The notes under the pieces: generated by a model
Database searches by the model: none
What the model saw: the letters and a program-made list of their open reading frames with translations, nothing else
What the model was told of the DNA's origin: nothing
Origin: Octopus sinensis
Lineage: Eukaryota
Length of the DNA: 64,000 nt
Assembly (NCBI RefSeq): GCF_006345805.1
Contig: NC_042998.1
Location: 122,512,001-122,576,000 of the forward strand
Direction: 5' to 3'
Made by a program: the position numbers and the translations under genes
Shown here: positions 14,170 to 32,700 of the stretch, piece after piece
How the letters are laid out: every line of letters begins with the position of its first letter
Numbering within the stretch: the first letter of the stretch is position 1

Positions 14170-14185
14170 AAATAACAACAATAAC

Positions 14186-14232
<47 letters not shown>

Positions 14233-14239
14233 CAACAAC

Positions 14240-14301
<62 letters not shown>

Positions 14302-14335
14302 AATAATAATAATAGTGATAATAATAATATAACAA
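14170..14335. repeat. (AAT)n(AAC)n microsatellite
   Basis: Direct inspection. Confidence 0.95.
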
Positions 14336-14776
14336 TAAGGAAATGATCTTGATGATGAAGAATGATAAAAAGAATATGTTACTAAGTATAATAATAAATA
14401 ACAATGATGCCGTGGCAAATAAGTGTAAGAATGGATTTACTTACGTAGGTTAAATTTAGGTTTTGTACTTCATTGGACAAGAGAATTCTTTTGATGTATT
14501 TATCGTCTAAGAATCTTGTAATGAAAAAACACGTGAATAATGTATGCTACTGAATTTAGAGGAAATATTTTTGACATTCACTCATAGAAGAGTCGTTCAT
14601 AGAGAATTAACCCTATGTCAACATACTGTGTGAACATCATTACAAAAAATTAGGTAACATTAATCTTTGTTTATTAACTTTCTACAATCACCGTCTAACA
14701 TGTAGCAATACTGCATAACAGCACCTATGCAATCCTTCTTGAGATTTCATGAAAACTTATTTAGAAGATAAGTGCT

Positions 14777-14856
14777 TGGATGATTCATAACGGAAGTGGA
14801 TGATTCATAACGGAAGTGGATGATTCATAACGGAAGTGGATGATTCATAACGGAAG
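14777..14856 (+). repeat. 20-bp minisatellite x4 (TGGATGATTCATAACGGAAG)
   Basis: Four exact copies. Confidence 0.95.
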
Positions 14857-14898
14857 GGGTAATCCCAACACAAATCGCATCAGTTTCTTAGGGTTAAT

Positions 14899-14931
<33 letters not shown>

Positions 14932-14980
14932 TGTGTACAGTGCTCAGGTGCACTACAACTCATCTAAAGTGTATATATAA

Positions 14981-17746
14981 TCAGGTGTAGTTTCGGCGGA
15001 TTTCGGAAAGCATGAGGGCCTTAAAAGATGCAGTGTCATGGCAGTCAACAACTGACGCAGGCAGTTTATTCCATGCTTCAGCAACTCTGAGCGTGAAAAA
15101 ATGTTTCCGAAAGTCATGGGAGCTGTATTGTTTTCTGACTTTGTAGGCATGTCCACGTGTGTTAGACACATGGAGATCAAAAAGGTGTTCAGTGTTGTTG
15201 TTGGTGAGGTGGTTGATAACTTTGTGGGTGTTTACCAAGTCCGTCGCCAAACGCCGGAGCTTCAGTGAATCCATGCCCAGGGAAACAAGGCGCTCAGAAT
15301 ATGGTAGGTGTCTGATGGAGGGTATGCGTTTGGTTGCACGTCTCTGGACAGATTCCAGGAGGTCAATGTTCTGTGCAAGATAGGGGTTCCAAACTGATGA
15401 TGCGAATTCCAAGTGTGGTCGTACCATAGCTGTATACAGTTTTAAATAGATGGCTGGAGAGCGGCTAACAAAAGACCTGCTGAGTGATGCCAAGACACCC
15501 TCGGCCTTCCTGACAATCTTAGAGATATGCTTTGACCAACGCAAATCACTGCTGACAGTGATGCCTAGATCACGCTCGCAAGAGGATTTCTTGATATCAG
15601 TGTTGTGGAGGGAGTAAGTGAACGCAGGGTTTTTTCTCCCAAAATGCATGGTGGTACACTTGTCCACAGCCAGTTTCAGTTGCCAGTCTGTGATCCATTG
15701 CTGCATTGTGTCTAGGTCTGATTGCAGGAAAGAGTTGTAGACATCAGGATCTGTCCTCTTGATTTCAAGGTACAGCTTGATGTCGTCTGCATATTTCAAT
15801 ACTGTGGCATTCTTTAAATTGGCATCTATGTCTTTAATGTATGCCACAAACAAGAGGGGACCAAGGACAGATCCCTGTGGTACACCCGATGACATCTCAT
15901 ATGGTGTAGAGTGCTGTCCTAGAACTATGACTACCTCCTTTCGGCTGAGGATGAAGGATTTCAACCAGTTAAAAAGGTCATCCCCCACACCCATTGCAGA
16001 GAGTTTCACCATAAGCCTTTTGTGTGGCACAGAGTTGAAAGCCTTAGCAAAGTCAAGGTAGACAACATCCACCCATGAGCCACTGTCAGTAATCTGAGTA
16101 ATGTCCTCAAGGAACTCGACAAGCTGGTCACTGCAGCTGGAGTTAGGGACAAATCCATATTGTGAGGGTCGGATGAGACTGTGAGAGCTCCAGAAGTTCC
16201 AGAGTGTTTCTCTGACACACGATTCCATCAGTTTTGCAATACAGCTAGTGAGACTGACTGGGCGATAGTTGACAGGTGATGTGCGGTCGCCCTTTTTGAA
16301 CAGAGGAATGACACTGGCAGTTTTCCACTGCTCCGGAGTAGCACCATTGTTGAGACAGTACTGGAAGAAAATAGAAAGCTGGTGTAAAAGGAAGTGCCTG
16401 CCACGTTTGAGAAGCAGGTATGTAACTCCATCGAGACCAGGGGAGGCATAGTTGCGCTTATTTTGAAGGTGACGTCGCAGCATTGCAGGTGTAAATTCCA
16501 TAGTTGTTATGGAGTTTGCTGTTAGTGATGGTGAAGATGGTACATTTTGACTTTCAACAGTGAATATGTTTGCATAGCACTCGGCAATGAGTTCTGCGCA
16601 TTCCTTGGGGTCGTCAGTGATCTGGTTTGTGTGAGGGTTGCGAAGAGGGCCCACTGGAGAGTGAGGTCTCTGCTTTGAGTGCACATATTTCCAGAAAACC
16701 TTGCTGTCAGGATTGGCTGCTATGCACTGTTCAAATTCAAGCACTGCTTTTTTTGTCACTTGCTTGAGATGGTTGGAGGATTTATTCCGCTTCTTCCTGT
16801 TGGTGTCTGATTTATGCAACCTGTATTCCCGTTCAGCAGTCCGACGTTCCCTCCTGGCAAGTCGGACCGCTGAAGTTTCCCAAATTGCCCTTTTGGGGCG
16901 GTTCTTCTTTTTTTGTTTACGTGGCACTGATGCTGCACATGCTGCCCATATTGAGTCCAGGATACTCTGGAGTATAGTATTCACATCTCCAGAGTTGTAG
17001 AATTCACGCCAGTTTGGGTGCTGTAGTTCAGTGTGGTACAGGTTCCAATCTGCTCTCTTCCAATCGAAGGAAGCAGATTGGAGATGGTTCAGGTTTTTGT
17101 TGCCCGCAAGAGCCAGATTGGCGATGATCATAGCATGATCAGAGTCACCTAGAGGTTCCTTCGTAGTGCAATTGATAACCGCTTCAGGAGTTGTGGTGAA
17201 GAGCAGCTCCAAGGTGTTGTCGCCTCTTGTTGGAGAGGTGACTACTTGTGACCAGTTTAAGTCCAGCACAAGCTCAACAAAATCGTTTGCACTCTGTGGC
17301 CAATGGAAGGTCTCCCAATCGATCTCAGGATGATTGAAATCGCCTGCAATAAACACATAAGTGGCTGTTTTCCTGGCAGCAGCTCGGAGGACATTGCAAA
17401 GCTGTGTGTCCCCATGGTAACTTGGGGGACGATAAACAACGCCAAGCAGGAGTGTTGACATGGTCATACGCACGTCACAGAAAAAAACTTCTTCTTGTGA
17501 TTCGTTCAAATCGGCACAAGGAATTACCAAAAAATTTGAACGAACGTAGACCATCACACCACCACCACGGCGGTTAGTGCGGTCCTTACGGAAGAGGTTG
17601 TACCCCGTAATGTTGAAAACCCCATCACAGAGTAAGGAATGCGCCCATGTTTCCGTGACAGTGATGAAGTCAGGGTCAACACTTCTGACGTAGGCGTTGA
17701 ACAAATGTATTTTGTTGCATAAACTGCGAGCATTTAAGGACAACAA
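14981..17746 (-). CDS. LINE ORF2: apurinic-like endonuclease + reverse transcriptase (921 aa from TTG; frame open from 17830; no ATG before the EN motifs)
   Basis: Motifs LNARSL, TETW, GDFNHP and SDH (EN); SPGLDG, YRPVSLTS, YLDFAKAF, GVPQGSVLGP and YADD (RT). No internal stops. Confidence 0.93.
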   Translation of the reverse strand: MLSLNARSLCNKIHLFNAYVRSVDPDFITVTETWAHSLLCDGVFNITGYNLFRKDRTNRRGGGVMVYVRSNFLVIPCADLNESQEEVFFCDVRMTMSTLLLGVVYRPPSYHGDTQLCNVLRAAARKTATYVFIAGDFNHPEIDWETFHWPQSANDFVELVLDLNWSQVVTSPTRGDNTLELLFTTTPEAVINCTTKEPLGDSDHAMIIANLALAGNKNLNHLQSASFDWKRADWNLYHTELQHPNWREFYNSGDVNTILQSILDSIWAACAASVPRKQKKKNRPKRAIWETSAVRLARRERRTAEREYRLHKSDTNRKKRNKSSNHLKQVTKKAVLEFEQCIAANPDSKVFWKYVHSKQRPHSPVGPLRNPHTNQITDDPKECAELIAECYANIFTVESQNVPSSPSLTANSITTMEFTPAMLRRHLQNKRNYASPGLDGVTYLLLKRGRHFLLHQLSIFFQYCLNNGATPEQWKTASVIPLFKKGDRTSPVNYRPVSLTSCIAKLMESCVRETLWNFWSSHSLIRPSQYGFVPNSSCSDQLVEFLEDITQITDSGSWVDVVYLDFAKAFNSVPHKRLMVKLSAMGVGDDLFNWLKSFILSRKEVVIVLGQHSTPYEMSSGVPQGSVLGPLLFVAYIKDIDANLKNATVLKYADDIKLYLEIKRTDPDVYNSFLQSDLDTMQQWITDWQLKLAVDKCTTMHFGRKNPAFTYSLHNTDIKKSSCERDLGITVSSDLRWSKHISKIVRKAEGVLASLSRSFVSRSPAIYLKLYTAMVRPHLEFASSVWNPYLAQNIDLLESVQRRATKRIPSIRHLPYSERLVSLGMDSLKLRRLATDLVNTHKVINHLTNNNTEHLFDLHVSNTRGHAYKVRKQYSSHDFRKHFFTLRVAEAWNKLPASVVDCHDTASFKALMLSEIRRNYT

Positions 17747-17802
17747 TTTGTACCCTGCTCGCAGTTTATGATGGTGTGTAGAGGATGGCAGGTTGTTCTG
17801 GC

Positions 17803-19053
17803 TTAGTTTCCCTGAGTTGCTGTAGTCTTTTTAGTTATTGTGGGTAGAGAGCACTCAGACCAGCTGGTATCTCTCTTCCACGTTTCAGCAGTCTTGACAA
17901 ATCTCCAGATTTGTCTATCTTCCCGAAGACTGAAGCTTTCCTGTAGAGCTGAGTTCCTATTCAGGGAAGCCACTACACGTAGCTTCGGACGTACATCGGA
18001 CGGTAAGCCTGGGCGTGTTCGGAAGGTGGTCCGATTTTCCCGCCCAGCTTTAACTGAGGCCAGATGGTAAGAGGTTGCCTCAGTGGGGTCCGTAAAAGAC
18101 AACTTGATGAGCCTAGGTTTTGGGCCAGGTCGTCCAAGGCGGGTAGCACCCGTTGGGGGAACGCAGCCTAGGTCTTTGGCTGAGTTGGCAGCAAAAGCCT
18201 GAAGATCAGCCATGTCTTCTGGTACCCCAATGGCAATGACTTCATGGGTGGCAGAATCCGCGGTCTTAAATGCGACAAGAGGTACAGGTACAGGGAGGTT
18301 CTTTAGCAGAGCATTCCGATAAGACCCCTCATTGTGGAGTCCAACCTGAATGGTTGCTTTTATTCCTGCTACTTCCCCTTTTAAAGCACAGATCGATTGT
18401 TGCAGTTCTGCAAGAACCGCACTGGTCAATTGGTGTTGTTGTTGTTGCTGTTGTTGCTCTGGTTGTGGTTGATTTTGTTGTTGCTGTTGTTGTTGTTGAT
18501 GTTGTTGTTGCTGCTGCTCTGGTTGTGGTTGATTTTGTTGTTGCTGCTGCTCTGGTTGTGGTTGATTTTGTGTGTTGCTGCTGCTCTGGTTGTGGTTGAT
18601 TTTGTTGTTGCTGCTGCTGCTGCTCTAGTTGTTGCTGCTGCTGTGTTGTTGCTGCTGCTCTGGTTGTGGTTGATTTTGTTGTTGCTGCTGTTGCTGTTCC
18701 GCCTCCTCCACGGGAGTGGCAGGGGGAGACACAATCGTCGGTTGTGGAGGCACGCAGGCCTGACACTGAAAAGTCCAAGATTTAAGCTGAACCATCTTCC
18801 AGAGTCTATCCATCATAGCATTATGATGGCTCTTTTTTTGGCCTGGGATCTTCTGAAAGTCCGTGGCACATTGGAGGCAGACAGAGATGAGACATGTCCC
18901 ACATTCGACCCAGCGATTACGGAACGTATTTTCGGGTTCCGTACAGATGTGGCAGGTGTGATTTTCTGGGCAGTGTTCTATTTTAGAGCAGCGACCAGTC
19001 TTATCGCACGCCGCTATGGATTTTACCATGGCGATTCTGTTGGTTCTGGTCAT
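17803..19053 (-). CDS. LINE ORF1 (about 416 aa reconstructed): PHD-like finger, poly-Q linker, coiled coil and C-terminal domain; two compensating frameshifts
   Basis: Track ORFs 18625-19053 and 17803-18429 are in the same frame. Cys pattern CHIC..ECGTC..VCLQC..CQAC. The QQQQNQPQPE repeat has a -1 indel near 18645 and a +1 indel near 18572. Confidence 0.8.
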
Positions 19054-19642
19054 CCGTAGAGACAGAAAATGTAAACAACAATACGATAAAAGTAAAATAT
19101 AAAATATTTGTTTTTGATTCGTTCTTTTTTGTGTATATTCCTTGTTCTTAAATATTGTGTGTGTATATACACATGTTTCGTTCTTTTTTGTGTATATTCC
19201 TTTTTTTCTTAAATATTGCGTGTGTATACATAAAAGTATTTGTGCGTATAGACACGGAGAAAGTTTGTAAACAGAAATGAAATTTTTGATTTTTTTGCAG
19301 TGTAGTCCGTCACATTAAATAGTGTGATTTATTTTCACTCTGCACGTATATACATGTGTGCTACAAGTATCTATGTATGTATGTATGTCACTGCTTTATA
19401 AATTTTGGACGTACTTACTGTCGTTCAACGATTTCTTTTACCCTCAACTACACGTGGTGAATTCTTCCATTGTAGATCTGTGGTGGTCATCGTCGTAATA
19501 TTTTCTCTTTAGTTTCCTCGCCAAATTGATTATACCCTAATCAAACCATTTGTTTGTCTACTTGTGAATGTGTCTTTGTTTTAGTAACATTATCTCCATG
19601 GTTACTTTATCTTCTACGCCGTGAGGATCATATACACAAAAG

Positions 19643-19860
19643 TAATTGTTGTATACAGTGCTCAGGTCACTACAGCTAAGACAAAAAATGCCATTAGGTG
19701 TACTGATGGCGGACTTTGGGAAGTATGGAAGTTTTAAAGGATATAGTGTCTCGACAGCTAACGACCGATGTGGGTAGTTTATTTCAAGCTTCAACAATTC
19801 TGAGCGTAAAGAACTGTTTCCGAAAGTCATGGATGCTGTGTTGTTTTGCCAGACAAATCC
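19643..19860 (-). mobile_element. 5'-truncated, diverged copy of the same CR1 family (3' end only)
   Basis: Translates KQHSIHDFRKQFFTLRIVEA*NKLPTSVVSCRDTISFK..QYT*, matching the ORF2 C-terminus at 14981-15140. Shares the 3' UTR motif ctgagcactgta. Confidence 0.85.
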
Positions 19861-20477: not shown

Positions 20478-21200
<723 letters not shown>

Positions 21201-29762: not shown

Positions 29763-32700
29763 ATGATCAAGATTGGTTGTGTAAATGCGCGTGGCTTGGG
29801 GTCCCCTTGGAAACAAGGGTACCTCTTAAATGACATAAAGTCACATAAGTTAGAAATCATAGCCATAAGCGAGACCAGACTCCACAATCCGCGGGCCCTA
29901 AAGACCATGTTTGGCGGACAGTTCAACATTTATTTTTCCCCCTGTCTGCCGAGAATGGGCGGTAGTGGCACCGCGGTACTTTTTCACAAGAGTCTGGATC
30001 TCAATGTAAGGACAATATTCGTAGACCCGGAGGGTAGACTGGTCGTCCTGGATGTCGACGGCAGCAATGGGTGCGCTTTTCGGCTCGTATCAGTTTACGC
30101 ACCGCCCTTAACAGGTCGGGCGGATTTCTTTCAACGTCTAGAAGTTTTCTTGGGAACGTCTCGTCCTTTACTCTTAGTGGGGGATTGGAATGCTACCTTG
30201 GACACGCATGTAGACTACGTGGGTAGAGATAGGAATAGACGGGGATGCAAAGAGACCTGCTCAGACGCTTTCAACTGTCTGACAGGTTTCGACTAGACCA
30301 CCCGAATGCGCCAACGTGGACATGGAGCAACCGCATCGGGTCGTCGAGATCGTATCTAGATAGGATACTGTGTAGGACAGTAGATAGAGATAGCATAGGA
30401 TGTCCACAATTCCACATAGTCAGCTACACGGATCACAAACTTGTGACATGTACGCTAGACTTAGGTAAGACACTTAGGCAGGGTCCCGGATACTGGAAAC
30501 TAAACGCGTCTTTCCCATCGAGACAAGTTTTCAGAGACCGGATTAGCACACTAGTAAAGAGGGCTTTGACGGGAGCCATCATCAACAACAAATGGTGGTT
30601 TGCCCTCAAGAGAGCAGTAAAAGCAGAAGCGATTAGGTACAGCAAAGCACTAGCCATAGATAGAAATAGAGTAGAGGGTGAGCTAGTTAAGAAGCTAGAA
30701 GAGGCAATTAGAAGCGGCATCGCATCCGACGTTTTGGCGGCGAGGTTGGCCCTCGACCAACACTTCAACGCCAAACACGAAGGATGTGCTGTCAGAGCTA
30801 GGATGCGTGCTCTAAGGAACGAAGGTGTTGGAGCCGCGAGAGAGGCCCGGGTGGCAGAGGCGCAACAGGGCAACAAAGCCACCATTCGGTCACTGGTAGA
30901 TGAACAGGGGCGCGAATTGCTCGAGCCAAGTAAAATGTGTGAGGCCTTTCAGCAGCATTTTGCCCGACTGTTCGGAACGAGTGGAGGGCAAGAACGTAGG
31001 GTGGACTTCAGTGCCTACCTACATAGCCTACCACGACTCTCGACAAGAAAGGCAGGGTGCTGCGAAGGTGCCATCACGGCGGCGGAAGTGCGGGAAGCGA
31101 TGGCAGAATGCTCGAGGGACAAATCACCGGGTTTGGATGGTCTACCCTACGAGCTTTACAATTGTATGCCAGACTTGTTTGGAGATCTCTTGGCGGCGGT
31201 GTACTGCAACTGGCAGCAAAACGGGAGCATTCCTGGTTTTGTGAGCCGAGGAGCCGTAACACTGCTGAAGAAAGATCTAAACAAGGGAAATGTAATAGAT
31301 AACTTTAGGCCCATCACTCTGCTTAATGCAGACTTGAAAATTTTGGCCAAGGTGCTAGCCAAGAGGTTGGCGCTTGTCATCGAGAAACTGGTCGACAAGG
31401 CGCAAACATGCGCCGTGCCAGGCCGGACCATCCATGACAACCTCCATCTGATGCGCTACATCATAGACAGGGTAGTTAACGAACCTGGCATGGGTGGGGC
31501 CCTGATCAACTTGGATCAATCAAAAGCCTTTGATAGGGTAGACCATCGATACTTGGAGGCAGTCCTGAGAGCGGCTGGTTTCGGTCCCGTCTTCCGCGGC
31601 TGGATAGCTGCCTTGTACAGAGGCATCCGTTCGGTAATTCGCGTAAATGGACATCTATCGAGACCTTTCGACATTGCACGTTCGGTCCGTCAGGGATGCC
31701 CCCTCTCGGCGCTTCTATACGTATTGACTCTTGAGCCACTACTGCGGAAGCTGGCGACTCTAAGGGGCATCCCGCGAGAATTGGGATGCGGGACGAGCGT
31801 GTCTGCATACGCGGACGACGTCACCGTCATAGTGTCTAGCCACGAGCACATCGAGCTGGTCGGCGAGACACTGAAAAACTACGAAGCGGTGACAGGAGCG
31901 AAAATCAACCGGGAAAAGTCAGTGGGCTTGCGACTAGGCACCTGGAGAAGCAAGCCCATGCCGTCCACCAGCGCCTCCGTCGTGGGACGCTGGACCGACG
32001 GCCCGGTTGAGTTGCTCGGGGTCTGGTTTGGTCCGGACCTCCAAGTGGAGAAGAACTGGAACGAGATAACGAGTAGGGTGGTCACTCTCGCCCGGCAATG
32101 GGCCGAGAGGAAACTGTCCCTAAAAGGTCGAGCGGAGGTGGCGAACACGTACATCGCGTCCGTCATCTACTACCGCCTGACCGTCGTACCTTGTCCCGAC
32201 CCTACCATCACCAAACTACAACGCATCCTCTTTCGCTTCTTGTGGAAAGGATGCGTCCCGATGGTCAGGCGATCCATTTGCTGTCAACACCCGTTAAAAG
32301 GAGGGCTGGGCATGCCGTGGTTGATGATGCGCAGACACGCGCTGAGACTGCGACATCTCTGGCTCTATGTAGACGACGGTGAACAGGTGTGGTCGCCGTT
32401 TGTGAGGCACGCTTTCCCGCAGCTCGTCTCCATGACCGAACTGCAGTCGTGGATCAAAAAGAGGCCGAGGAAGGGCGAATGGCACCGCGAGTGTCGCGTT
32501 GCTCTCAAGCAACTCTGCCGTCCTGGGTCGACCTTAAGTGACTTCAACACAACCAAAGCATTCTATAGGGGTTTAGTGGAGGGGAGGTACGACGACGAGC
32601 TCGGGGCGAACCTGGACGTCGACGAGGAGTACCTGACCCGCCTGTTCGGGACGACTTTCGGGCCAGGGCCCATGGACAACTTCCAGAGATCCCTGGCCTG

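What the first reader, a model, noticed from the sequence alone, without database searches (positions are those of the whole stretch)
17746..17833. ATG-less LINE ORF2 overlaps ORF1 at a canonical -1 slippery heptamer (G_GGA_AAC) directly before the ORF1 stop
Seen: on the minus strand ORF1 ends ..CAG GGA AAC TAA (stop at 17803-17805). The ORF2 frame is -1 relative to ORF1 and opens only after a TAA at 17831-17833, so the overlap is under 30 nt. The X_XXY_YYZ heptamer GGGAAAC (17806-17812) lies inside it, in the correct phase. ORF2 has no ATG until residue 65 of the track ORF, after the conserved NARSL and TETW endonuclease motifs. Known: G_GGA_AAC is the -1 frameshift site of the Gypsy-derived gene PEG10. 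LINE ORF2 is usually made by re-initiation or translational coupling, not by gag-pol-style frameshifting. Inference: this CR1 family may make a single ORF1-ORF2 fusion of about 1357 aa (PHD-polyQ-EN-RT). I see no strong stimulatory structure; there is only a weak CCTGC/GCAGG pairing starting 13 nt downstream (17788-17792 with 17754-17758).
Basis: partly seen in the sequence, partly recalled or inferred. Interest (0 to 1): 0.8.

Follow-up and report, generated by a model that had tools for sequence, protein, structure and literature searches.

The report
Conserved -1 frameshift site in LINEs
An octopus LINE retrotransposon joins its two genes through a classic "slippery" seven-base ribosomal frameshift site, and the same site sits at the same junction in distantly related LINEs, which suggests these elements make their reverse transcriptase as a Gag-Pol-like fusion protein; this has not been tested experimentally.

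Summary
On the minus strand ORF1 ends CAG GGA AAC TAA (stop 17805-17803). G_GGA_AAC (17812-17806) is in phase. ORF2 (endonuclease plus reverse transcriptase) is in the -1 frame, opens after TAA 17833-17831, and has no ATG for 92 codons.

Comparative data support the -1 frameshift reading. I read 13 ORF1/ORF2 junctions from related elements (ORF2 identity 94% down to about 30%). ORF2 is in the -1 frame in all 13. Eleven carry one in-phase X_XXA_AAC heptamer in the overlap: GGGAAAC nine times, TTTAAAC once, AAAAAAC once. Flanking sequence is unrelated, all three stop codons occur, and the codon before GGA is always NNG whatever it encodes. GGGAAAC occurs in phase nowhere else in 10,522 codons. 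Thirty-six of 47 ORF1 homologue tails contain "GN".

- This copy has an in-frame TAG (18627-18625) in ORF1's glutamine repeat, so it cannot itself make the 1357-aa fusion.
- The PHD label is not confirmed.
- ORF1's C-terminal half is an L1-type coiled coil-RRM-CTD.
- The CCTGC/GCAGG pairing is no better than chance.
- A 15-bp hairpin (17770-17718) was missed, but it is not conserved.

No shared stimulatory structure was found, and frameshifting itself is untested. Open-access literature describes no such site in CR1/L2 LINEs.

The parts
14895..19591 (-). Full-length LINE copy (CR1/L2-type, Jockey superfamily): 5' UTR, ORF1, ORF2, short 3' UTR and a (TTA)n tail
   Evidence: Homology with an O. 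vulgaris copy (L004 4858-9502, 93.8% identity) spans window 19591-14906. The (TAA/TTA)n tail is at 14895-14931.
17803..19053 (-). ORF1: 416 codons plus stop, interrupted in this copy by one in-frame TAG
   Evidence: Translation. ATG at 19053, final stop TAA at 17805-17803.
18625..18627 (-). Premature in-frame TAG in ORF1, a defect of this copy
   Evidence: It lies in a locally out-of-register stretch of the 33-nt tandem repeat.
18754..19008 (-). N-terminal Cys/His-rich zinc-finger-like domain of ORF1. Coordinates are approximate (about ORF1 residues 16-100).
   Evidence: Cys/His pattern in the translation. Pfam gives only sub-threshold ZZ/C1 hits (E 0.24-0.84).
18435..18690 (-). 33-nt tandem repeat (7.7 copies) encoding the Q-rich (QQQNQPQPEQQ)n linker of ORF1
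   Evidence: Tandem Repeats Finder and translation.
17806..18429 (-). ORF1 C-terminal half: coiled coil, RRM and CTD (L1-type, 'type II' ORF1p), then a variable tail ending ...TQGN
   Evidence: AlphaFold model, mean pLDDT 80.7. The best PDB matches are the human LINE-1 ORF1p trimer 2ykp/2yko/2ykq, E 8e-6 over about 195 columns. 48 homologues were found.
17831..17833 (-). TAA that closes the -1 (ORF2) frame upstream. The ORF2 frame is open from 17830.
17806..17812 (-). Slippery heptamer G_GGA_AAC in ORF1 phase: the proposed -1 frameshift site
   Evidence: It is conserved in phase in L004, L003, L002, L007, L008, L009, L010 and L012, and replaced by TTTAAAC in L005 and AAAAAAC in L006. The synonymous choices NNG-GGA-AAC have a joint probability of 1.3-5.8% per element.
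17803..17805 (-). ORF1 stop codon TAA, immediately 3' of the heptamer
   Evidence: A stop is adjacent in 7 of the 11 heptamer junctions, and all three stop codons are used: TAA, TAG, TGA.
14981..17830 (-). ORF2 frame: 949 sense codons and a stop, uninterrupted in this copy, with no ATG in the first 92 codons
17123..17740 (-). Apurinic/apyrimidinic-type endonuclease domain of ORF2
   Evidence: Pfam Exo_endo_phos (E 1.4e-10) and Exo_endo_phos_2 (E 8e-12), residues 31-236 of the 949-aa frame.
15614..16291 (-). Reverse transcriptase domain of ORF2
   Evidence: Pfam RVT_1, E 2e-36, residues 514-739.
17718..17770 (-). Strong RNA hairpin with a 15-bp perfect stem (CAUAAACUGCGAGCA / UGCUCGCAGUUUAUG). 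It starts 35 nt 3' of the heptamer, and its 3' arm encodes the conserved NARSLC motif.
   Evidence: 100-nt fold: -29.6 kcal/mol, z = -5.7. 113-nt fold: -31.6 kcal/mol, z = -4.0. The stem is 14/15 in L004 and only its lower part is partly kept in L003 and L002. There are no covarying pairs.
17788..17792 (-). Its partner GCAGG is at 17758-17754.
   Evidence: Present in the 60-nt MFE fold, but dG is -6.0 and z = 0.09, so it is no better than shuffled sequence. GCAGG is taken up by the strong hairpin in longer folds.
17792..17796 (-). ACAAC, 9 nt 3' of the heptamer. It could pair with GUUGU (17744-17740) in the hairpin loop to form an H-type pseudoknot. Speculative.
   Evidence: Crude pseudoknot enumeration. 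Both pentamers are kept in L004 and L003, but they also encode conserved residues.
14895..14931 (-). 3' terminal (TTA)n microsatellite tail of the element

Best explanation
The feature is the ORF1/ORF2 junction of a CR1/L2-type LINE, probably in an octopus genome.

Proposed mechanism: ribosomes translating ORF1 reach G_GGA_AAC with tRNA-Gly on GGA in the P site and tRNA-Asn on AAC in the A site. In a minority of passes both tRNAs slip one base 5' and re-pair with GGG and AAA. Decoding continues with CUA in the -1 frame. The result is an ORF1p-ORF2p fusion: zinc finger, polyQ, coiled coil, RRM, CTD, linker, endonuclease, reverse transcriptase. Most ribosomes instead terminate at the adjacent stop and make ORF1p alone. 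This would set a high ORF1p:ORF2p ratio, as Gag:Gag-Pol does. The fusion's coiled coil could also tether the enzyme to ORF1p trimers on its own RNA.

Shown: the anatomy of the site; deep conservation of an in-phase X_XXA_AAC heptamer, the -1 frame and the lack of a start codon; nucleotide-level (synonymous) constraint on the heptamer.

Inferred: that slippage actually occurs, its efficiency, what stimulates it, and the role of the fusion. The window's own copy is defective because ORF1 carries a nonsense codon, so the mechanism applies to the family and not to this insertion.
For: 1. Anatomy is as described.
2. ORF2 is in the -1 frame in 13 of 13 related junctions.
3. Eleven of 13 have exactly one in-phase X_XXA_AAC heptamer in the overlap.
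   - GGGAAAC: window, L004, L003, L002, L007, L008, L009, L010, L012.
   - TTTAAAC: L005. AAAAAAC: L006.
   - Overlaps range from 16 to 226 nt.
4. Background rates are low: GGGAAAC in phase 0 of 10,522 codons elsewhere, X_XXA_AAC 4 of 10,522.
5. The constraint is on nucleotides. The Gly codon is always GGA (14-41% of Gly codons in these elements). The Asn codon is always AAC. The preceding codon is always NNG although it encodes Q, V, S, A or T. The product of the per-element joint probabilities is 1.6e-13 over the 8 elements scored, which are not fully independent.
6. The substitute heptamers change the amino acids (LN, KN) but keep the slippery pattern.
7. The heptamer stays near the opening of the ORF2 frame even where the ORF1 stop lies far downstream: 33 nt in L009, 48 nt in L007, 201 nt in L006.
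8. Thirty-six of 47 ORF1 homologue tails contain GN, against about 5 expected from composition. Most of the rest end KN or GK.
9. No ATG is conserved in the ORF2 frame.
10. Related lineages appear to encode the N-terminal domain and EN-RT as one ORF (L011; Metcalfe & Casane 2014, PMC4120745), so a fused product is plausible in this group.
11. From my own knowledge, not checked here: X_XXA_AAC heptamers are among the most efficient eukaryotic -1 shift sites.
Against: - No frameshift product has been observed; all the evidence is comparative.
- No stimulatory structure with the canonical 5-9 nt spacer is conserved. Downstream folds of 60 nt are mostly no better than shuffled sequence, four related sequences give a -3.6 kcal/mol consensus with no covariation, and a crude pseudoknot search finds nothing consistent across lineages.
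- The window's strong hairpin starts 35 nt downstream and is not conserved.
- One relative (L013) has a -1 overlap without any canonical heptamer.
- Both copies of this particular subfamily that I could read (window, L004) are defective, so activity of the subfamily is unproven.
- The 13 junctions come from few samples and are not phylogenetically independent.
Confidence: 0.7

Rival explanations
1. ORF2 is made as a separate protein. Ribosomes terminate at the ORF1 stop and re-initiate without an AUG, as in the unconventional ORF2 expression of human L1 or SART1-like coupling. The heptamer would be incidental, or would act as a calicivirus TURBS-like 'GGGA' tether to 18S rRNA.
For: The ORF1 stop directly follows the heptamer in 7 of the 11 heptamer junctions. 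ORF2 lacks an AUG, and per Atkins et al. 2016 (PMC5009743) L1 ORF2 expression is thought to be AUG-independent. GGGAAAC contains GGGA, which resembles TURBS motif 1 (UGGGA; from my own knowledge). A review of non-LTR protein biogenesis considers only initiation-type mechanisms (PMC3894237).
Against: - Where the ORF1 stop lies 33-201 nt downstream (L009, L007, L006), the heptamer stays at the start of the ORF2-frame opening and not near the stop.
- Re-initiation does not require a constant -1 frame (13 of 13), a fixed codon phase of the motif, or an NNG third base.
- TTTAAAC and AAAAAAC lack GGGA but keep the slippery pattern.
- There is no UAAUG/AUGA-type stop-start overlap.
- The base before GGGA is not a conserved U.
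Confidence: 0.15
2. The conserved element is a protein motif: a C-terminal Gly-Asn in ORF1p. The slippery heptamer would be a by-product, and ORF2 would be expressed by some other route.
For: GN is conserved near the C-terminus in 36 of 47 ORF1 homologues.
Against: Synonymous positions are invariant (GGA 9 of 9, AAC 9 of 9, preceding NNG 9 of 9 across five different amino acids). Other lineages have LN or KN encoded by TTTAAAC or AAAAAAC. The motif's distance from the folded CTD (5-42 residues) and from the C-terminus (0-20 residues) varies freely, and it lies in a low-confidence, probably disordered tail.
Confidence: 0.05
3. The frame offset is a decay artefact. This insertion is a dead copy whose ORF1/ORF2 junction was altered by an indel or an assembly error, and the active family has one continuous ORF or an ATG-started ORF2.
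For: This copy has a nonsense codon in ORF1. The O. vulgaris copy has stops in both ORFs. One distant lineage (L011) looks like a single ORF broken by a 1-nt indel.
Against: The same junction architecture recurs in 11 divergent elements from different samples, several with both ORFs called intact (L002, L006, L008, L009). The window's ORF2 frame is intact over 949 codons.
Confidence: 0.05

Closest known systems
Retroviral and LTR-retrotransposon gag-pol -1 programmed ribosomal frameshifting (for example Rous sarcoma virus A_AAU_UUA followed directly by the gag UAG; many Drosophila LTR elements)
   Same: An X_XXY_YYZ heptamer in the upstream ORF's phase, with the polymerase ORF in the -1 frame, no start codon of its own, and a short overlap. 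In RSV the 0-frame stop directly follows the shift site (from my own knowledge). The product is a structural-protein/polymerase fusion made at a low ratio. Atkins et al. 2016 (PMC5009743) report that 28 of 51 animal LTR elements have pol in the -1 frame.
   Different: The element here is a non-LTR retrotransposon with an L1-like ORF1p, not Gag, and it has no protease to process a fusion. No conserved downstream pseudoknot or stem-loop was found.
PEG10 (domesticated Ty3/Gypsy gene) and polerovirus (BWYV-type) G_GGA_AAC frameshift sites
   Same: Identical heptamer, G_GGA_AAC. PEG10 frameshifting is documented at high efficiency (PMC5009743; PMC2800197).
   Different: There is no homology. Those sites depend on a defined pseudoknot a few nucleotides downstream, and none is evident here. 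PEG10's ORF1 stop is not adjacent to its heptamer.
Drosophila HeT-A (Jockey-clade non-LTR telomeric element) gag frameshift
   Same: It is a non-LTR element said to need a frameshift for expression (Atkins et al. 2016, PMC5009743). It is the only non-LTR frameshifting precedent I found in the open-access library.
   Different: The HeT-A shift is inside gag, and HeT-A has no ORF2/RT. It does not link ORF1 to EN-RT, and it is not an X_XXA_AAC site conserved across lineages.
SART1 UAAUG translational coupling and human L1 unconventional ORF2 initiation
   Same: Both address the same problem: expressing ORF2 from a bicistronic LINE RNA at a low level, close to the ORF1 stop (PMC3894237; PMC5009743).
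   Different: Those mechanisms yield a separate ORF2p and use a stop-start overlap or an inter-ORF spacer. Here there is no AUG, a fixed -1 overlap and a slippery heptamer.
Single-ORF CR1/L2 subgroups, and type II ORF1 with an N-terminal PHD (Metcalfe & Casane 2014, PMC4120745)
   Same: ORF1 architecture here is a zinc-finger-like domain plus coiled coil, RRM and CTD. The paper reports PHD plus 'transposase 22' type II ORF1 in L2 subgroup 6 and CR1 subgroup 5. It also reports subgroups with the N-terminal domain at the 5' end of a single ORF, so fused products exist in this superfamily.
   Different: That paper does not mention frameshifting or ORF overlap (0 occurrences). Here the fusion would be conditional, through recoding.
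2A 'ribosome skipping' peptides in APE-type non-LTR elements (Odon et al. 2013, PMC3708506)
   Same: Another translational recoding device used by CR1-group LINEs. I saw 2A-like motifs in the distant homologues P0024, P0012 and P0021.
   Different: 2A separates products from one ORF. The mechanism proposed here joins two ORFs.

Membership tests
Canonical eukaryotic -1 programmed ribosomal frameshift signal | X_XXY_YYZ slippery heptamer in the phase of the upstream ORF | tested here: met
   G_GGA_AAC at 17812-17806 in ORF1 phase.
Canonical eukaryotic -1 programmed ribosomal frameshift signal | Downstream ORF in the -1 frame, open across the shift site, and lacking its own initiation codon | tested here: met
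   The -1 frame is open from 17830, and the first ATG is at codon 93. ORF2 is in the -1 frame in 13 of 13 relatives, with no conserved ATG.
Canonical eukaryotic -1 programmed ribosomal frameshift signal | Phylogenetic conservation of the site beyond coding constraint | tested here: met
   Eleven of 13 junctions carry X_XXA_AAC. Synonymous positions are invariant.
Canonical eukaryotic -1 programmed ribosomal frameshift signal | Stimulatory RNA structure (pseudoknot or stem-loop) 5-9 nt downstream | tested here: inconclusive
   No conserved structure was found. The window's strong hairpin begins 35 nt downstream. A possible ACAAC/GUUGU pseudoknot and lineage-specific hairpins (L002, L005) are unproven. 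There are too few close sequences for covariation analysis.
Canonical eukaryotic -1 programmed ribosomal frameshift signal | Measured trans-frame product | not testable with these tools
   Needs a reporter assay, ribosome profiling or mass spectrometry.
CR1/L2-type LINE (Jockey superfamily non-LTR retrotransposon) | ORF2 with an N-terminal APE endonuclease and a central reverse transcriptase | tested here: met
   Pfam Exo_endo_phos, Exo_endo_phos_2 and RVT_1.
CR1/L2-type LINE (Jockey superfamily non-LTR retrotransposon) | 3' end made of a short tandem repeat rather than a poly(A) tail | tested here: met
   (TTA)n at 14895-14931, ending the homology with the O. vulgaris copy.
CR1/L2-type LINE (Jockey superfamily non-LTR retrotransposon) | Placement in the CR1 (versus L2) clade by RT phylogeny against reference elements | not tested
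No Repbase/Dfam reference set was available. The ORF1 type fits either L2 subgroup 6 or CR1 subgroup 5 of PMC4120745.
Type II (L1-like) ORF1p | Coiled coil followed by an RRM and a C-terminal domain | tested here: met
   AlphaFold model with pLDDT 80.7: a long N-terminal helix followed by alpha/beta domains. The top PDB hits are the human L1 ORF1p trimer 2ykp/2yko (E 8e-6) and the RRM-CTD structure 2ldy. There is no sequence-level hit.
PHD finger at the ORF1 N-terminus | Match to a PHD profile (C4HC3 signature) | tested here: not met
   No PHD hit even at E <= 10; only weak ZZ/C1 zinc-finger hits. The domain is Cys/His-rich, so it is probably a divergent zinc finger.
Termination-reinitiation / stop-start coupling (SART1 UAAUG, calicivirus TURBS) | A restart AUG overlapping or within a few nucleotides of the upstream stop | tested here: not met
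   There is no ATG within 250 nt 3' of the ORF1 stop in the window. ATGs in relatives are at non-homologous positions.

The most novel reading that the evidence does not exclude
A broad, old group of CR1/L2-type LINEs expresses its endonuclease-reverse transcriptase only as an ORF1p-ORF2p fusion, made by -1 ribosomal frameshifting at a conserved X_XXA_AAC heptamer, often with the ORF1 stop codon directly 3' of it and without a canonical downstream pseudoknot. The group is found in cephalopods, in an annelid (a Capitella ORF1 homologue ends ...QSGN) and in many unidentified marine eukaryotes. That would be a Gag-Pol-like strategy in non-LTR retrotransposons. It would physically explain cis-preference and the low ORF2p dose, and it would be a natural system for studying structure-independent or stop-codon-assisted -1 frameshifting in animals.
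Probability: 0.55. Interest if true: 0.8.

Novelty: new variant of a known kind. Interest (0 to 1): 0.7.

Why it matters
How LINEs translate ORF2 from a bicistronic RNA is a long-standing open question. For human L1 the mechanism is described only as an unknown, AUG-independent kind of initiation (Atkins et al. 2016, PMC5009743).

A whole LINE group that uses a textbook slippery heptamer would give that question a simple and directly testable answer for one lineage. It would extend Gag-Pol-style recoding from LTR elements and viruses to non-LTR elements. It would also predict an ORF1p-ORF2p fusion that could explain cis-preference.

In practice, TE annotation pipelines and gene callers that demand an ATG for ORF2 will mis-annotate these elements. 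The gene calls seen here start ORF2 at arbitrary internal ATG or TTG codons. The heptamer is also a convenient marker for intact junctions.

The apparent lack of a conserved stimulatory structure is of interest to the recoding field.

Tried and rejected
- **Other copies in the window.** There is only a 200-nt 3' fragment (19649-19847) and an unrelated RT (30923-31822).
- **The search for related loci.** A narrower alignment returned one metagenome locus, L007. I could therefore not collect the dozens of close copies needed for covariation or synonymous-rate analysis.
- **L001 (P0001, 59% identity).** The contig starts 36 nt before the called gene and has no ORF1, so it is uninformative.
It is real but no better than shuffled sequence, so I rejected it as a stimulator.
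- **RNAalifold on four sequences.** Consensus -3.6 kcal/mol with no covariation.
- **Crude H-type pseudoknot enumeration.** It is significant only in window and L004, and only because of the long hairpin.
- **Rfam.** No family matched. There is only a sub-threshold miRNA-like hit that reflects the hairpin.
- **Pfam and PDB sequence searches on ORF1.** No domain hits. Only the structure comparison identified the L1 ORF1p fold.
- **C-rich tract downstream of the heptamer** (7 of 10 lineages). I noted it but did not adopt it as a stimulator, because it may simply encode a Pro/Ser/Thr linker.
- **Non-AUG initiation at the CTG/TTG codons of the linker.** These codons are kept in L003 but not in L002 or more distant lineages, so I rejected it as a general mechanism.
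- **Literature.** Ten searches found no open-access paper that describes a slippery heptamer at a CR1/L2 ORF1/ORF2 junction. Older subscription papers on jockey, T1, Cin4 or RTE that speculated about frameshifting between overlapping LINE ORFs could not be checked.

Full report
**1. Checking the observation**

Reading the minus strand shows ...ACT ACA GCA ACT CAG GGA AAC TAA. The stop is at 17805-17803 and GGGAAAC is at 17812-17806, phased G_GGA_AAC in the ORF1 frame.

The frame one base 5' (-1) is closed by TAA at 17833-17831. It then runs open for 949 codons to a stop at 14983-14981. The overlap is 28 nt, counted from the first ORF2-frame codon through the ORF1 stop. The first ATG in that frame is codon 93, which is residue 65 of the TTG-started ORF in the ORF list. 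It lies after the NARSL and TETW motifs.

Tandem slippage would give ...TTATQGN|LSQNNLPSSTHHHK..., and a product of 416 + 941 = 1357 residues.

ORF1 of this copy has an in-frame TAG at 18627-18625. It lies in a stretch of the glutamine-rich region that has slipped out of register. That region is a 33-nt tandem repeat of 7.7 copies at 18435-18690, with 12% indels. This insertion cannot itself make the fusion.

**2. What the element is**

ORF2 carries an APE-type endonuclease (Exo_endo_phos, Exo_endo_phos_2) and a reverse transcriptase (RVT_1, E 2e-36).

ORF1 has no Pfam hit, even at relaxed thresholds. The N-terminal Cys/His-rich segment gives only weak ZZ/C1 zinc-finger scores, so 'PHD' is unconfirmed.

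An AlphaFold model of the C-terminal 208 residues (mean pLDDT 80.7) matches the human LINE-1 ORF1p trimer best (2ykp/2yko/2ykq, E 8e-6 over about 195 columns), and also its RRM-CTD solution structure. ORF1 is therefore a type II coiled coil-RRM-CTD protein with an extra N-terminal zinc-finger-like domain and a polyQ linker. Metcalfe & Casane (PMC4120745) report this architecture for L2 subgroup 6 and CR1 subgroup 5.

Homology with a 93.8%-identical copy in Octopus vulgaris (L004, OX597842.1) spans window 19591-14906. The element ends in (TTA)n at 14895-14931. I did not test CR1 against L2 placement, because no reference RT set was available.

The O. vulgaris copy has stops in both ORFs. Both copies of this subfamily that I could read are therefore decayed, although the window's ORF2 is intact.

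**3. Comparative test of the junction**

Protein searches with ORF2 and ORF1, followed by contig look-ups and one metagenome scan, gave 13 readable ORF1/ORF2 junctions including the window.

ORF2 is in the -1 frame relative to ORF1 in all 13.

| Source | Relation to window | Heptamer | Distance from heptamer to ORF1 stop |
|---|---|---|---|
| Window | n/a | GGGAAAC | adjacent (TAA) |
| L004 | 94%-identical copy (DNA) | GGGAAAC | adjacent (TAA) |
| L003 | 80% ORF2 identity | GGGAAAC | adjacent (TGA) |
| L002 | 52% ORF2 identity | GGGAAAC | adjacent (TAG) |
| L012 | 31% ORF2 identity, TARA metagenome | GGGAAAC | adjacent (TAG) |
| L010 | ORF1 about 25-30% identity | GGGAAAC | adjacent (TAG) |
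| L008 | ORF1 about 25-30% identity | GGGAAAC | one codon |
| L009 | ORF1 about 25-30% identity | GGGAAAC | 33 nt |
| L007 | ORF1 about 25-30% identity | GGGAAAC | 48 nt |
| L005 | esterase-like ORF1 tail | TTTAAAC | adjacent (TAG) |
| L006 | 35% ORF2 identity | AAAAAAC | 201 nt (heptamer is 15 nt after the ORF2 frame opens) |

Each of these 11 has exactly one in-phase canonical heptamer in the overlap. Sequence on either side of the heptamer is unalignable between lineages.

There are two exceptions.
- L013 has a 64-nt -1 overlap with no canonical heptamer. A relic T_GGA_AAT upstream is followed by stops in the -1 frame.
- In L011 the PHD-containing ORF1 frame runs straight into the first endonuclease motif. 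This looks like a single-ORF lineage with a 1-nt indel in that copy. PMC4120745 reports single-ORF CR1/L2 subgroups.

**4. Is this more than shared ancestry or a protein motif?**

Elsewhere in these elements' ORFs, in-phase X_XXY_YYZ heptamers occur at 55 of 10,522 codon positions. X_XXA_AAC occurs at 4 and GGGAAAC at 0.

Even if x-Gly-Asn is taken as given, the nucleotide choices are constrained.
- GGA is only 14-41% of Gly codons in these elements.
- AAC is 37-69% of Asn codons.
- G is 17-24% of third positions.
- Yet all nine GGGAAAC elements have NNG-GGA-AAC. The NNG codon encodes Q, V, S, A or T.
- The per-element joint probability is 1.3-5.8%. The product over the eight elements scored is 1.6e-13. 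These are not fully independent, because window and L003 are related.

The alternative heptamers encode different dipeptides (LN, KN) but keep the slippery pattern with an AAC A-site codon.

At protein level, 36 of 47 ORF1 homologues have GN in the otherwise unconserved tail after the last conserved Trp. About 5 would be expected from composition. In 20 of them GN lies within 3 residues of the C-terminus. Most of the remainder end KN or GK. One such homologue is from the annelid Capitella teleta (P0093...PSPQSGN).

No ATG is conserved in the ORF2 frame. Where one exists it is at non-homologous positions.

**5. Downstream structure**

Longer folds show a 15-bp perfect hairpin at 17770-17718 (CAUAAACUGCGAGCA / UGCUCGCAGUUUAUG). 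The 100-nt fold gives -29.6 kcal/mol and z = -5.7. The 113-nt fold gives -31.6 kcal/mol and z = -4.0.

It begins 35 nt after the heptamer, which is too far for a canonical stimulator. It is 14/15 in the O. vulgaris copy, and only its lower part is partly kept in L003 and L002. RNAalifold on four sequences gives -3.6 kcal/mol and no covarying pair.

A pseudoknot between ACAAC (9 nt after the heptamer) and GUUGU in the hairpin loop is geometrically possible and is kept in L004 and L003. Both segments are also coding-constrained.

Other lineages have their own candidates: L002 has GGUGCC/GGCACC, and L005 has CACCCCUU/AAGGGGUG after a spacer of about 10 nt. Nothing is shared between lineages.

A C-rich, G-poor tract at +8 to +32 occurs in 7 of 10 lineages. 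It may simply encode a Pro/Ser/Thr linker.

Rfam has no match.

The stimulator is unresolved. The adjacent 0-frame stop (7 of 11) is the most recurrent neighbouring feature, but it is not universal.

**6. Mechanism**

The best-supported reading is canonical tandem -1 slippage at X_XXA_AAC, producing a minority ORF1p-ORF2p fusion beside abundant ORF1p. This is analogous to Gag and Gag-Pol.

The anatomy and the conservation are shown. Slippage, its efficiency, its stimulator and the function of the fusion are inferred.

A low-efficiency shift without a strong stimulator would fit the very low ORF2p dose typical of LINEs (from my own knowledge). A fusion carrying ORF1p's coiled coil could co-assemble with ORF1p trimers on the same RNA, which offers a mechanism for cis-preference. 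That last point is speculation.

**7. Rivals**

- *Termination-reinitiation or AUG-independent restart.* This fits the adjacent stops. It does not explain the constant -1 frame, the fixed phase, the NNG constraint, the non-GGGA heptamers, or the cases where the stop is 33-201 nt away.
- *A protein-level GN motif.* This is contradicted by the synonymous invariance and by the alternative heptamers.
- *A decay artefact of this copy.* This is contradicted by recurrence of the architecture in divergent elements with intact ORFs.

**8. Comparison with what is known**

-1 frameshifting at such heptamers is standard for retroviruses, LTR retrotransposons and domesticated genes such as PEG10, which uses the same G_GGA_AAC (PMC5009743; PMC2800197).

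For non-LTR elements the open-access literature I could search gives the following.
- A frameshift requirement inside HeT-A gag, with unresolved mechanisms for TART and L1 (PMC5009743).
- UAAUG coupling for SART1, and initiation-type models generally. The review of non-LTR protein biogenesis, PMC3894237, contains no occurrence of 'frameshift'.
- 2A peptides (PMC3708506).
- A suggestion of +1 frameshifting or re-initiation in Paramecium LINEs (PMC5405496).
- Two CR1/L2-focused papers that mention neither frameshifting nor overlap (PMC4120745, PMC13343379).

I recall that older papers on jockey, T1 and similar elements noted -1 overlaps and speculated about frameshifting, but I could not check them. 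I therefore rate this as a new variant of a known kind: a known mechanism in an element class where it is not established, with a recognisable conserved signal.

**9. Verdict**

Confidence that the family uses -1 frameshifting is about 0.7. Interest is 0.7.

Noticed in passing
window 19649-19847 (-): The 3'-terminal ~200 nt of a related LINE (74% identity to this element's own 3' end). It lies about 60 nt 5' of this element's 5' end (19591), so the two are tail-to-head neighbours.
   Followed up: partly
window 30923-31822 (+): Reverse-transcriptase coding fragment of an unrelated LINE, 25% amino-acid identity to this ORF2.
   Followed up: no
window 14777-14856: Perfect 20-nt tandem repeat of 4 copies (TGGATGATTCATAACGGAAG), just beyond the element's (TTA)n tail.
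   Followed up: no
window 20479-21165 and 14171-14338: Long microsatellites: (TCTG)n of about 173 copies, and (AAT/AACAAT)n. They generate long spurious ORFs in the ORF list.
   Followed up: no
window 18435-18690 (-): ORF1's polyQ linker is a 33-nt (11-aa, QQQNQPQPEQQ) tandem repeat with indels. Part of it is read out of register (SSSNN*SSSSSNNKINHNQSSS), which creates the premature TAG.
   Followed up: yes
window 17718-17770 (-): A 15-bp perfect hairpin in which the non-conserved linker codons (HHKLRAG) are the exact reverse complement of the codons for the conserved NARSLC endonuclease motif. z is -4 to -5.7. It is not conserved in the 80%-identical relative, and its function is unknown.
   Followed up: partly
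L011 2851-3034: In this distant relative the PHD-containing ORF1 frame continues directly into the first endonuclease motif (LRVLNINFLSIRTK), and the rest of the endonuclease is in the -1 frame. It is probably a single-ORF lineage with a 1-nt indel in this copy.
   Followed up: partly
L013 430-520: Exception to the rule: ORF2 is in the -1 frame with a 64-nt overlap but no canonical heptamer. A relic T_GGA_AAT is followed by stops in the -1 frame.
   Followed up: partly
proteins P0024, P0012, P0021 (distant ORF2 homologues): N-terminal 2A-like motifs (for example LLLSGDVESNPGP) precede the endonuclease, as Odon et al. 2013 described for CR1-group elements.
   Followed up: no
+8 to +32 nt 3' of the heptamer in window, L003, L005, L007, L008, L009, L010: A C-rich, G-poor tract (C fraction 0.28-0.52 against 0.10-0.31 background). 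It could be a protein-binding stimulator or simply Pro/Ser/Thr linker coding.
   Followed up: partly
proteins P0094 and P0046: Public gene models that fuse LINE parts. A Capitella teleta model joins the ORF1 CTD to the endonuclease, and another protein is a cysteine-synthase-like/ORF1 chimera. Both look like annotation artefacts caused by the missing ORF2 start codon.
   Followed up: no
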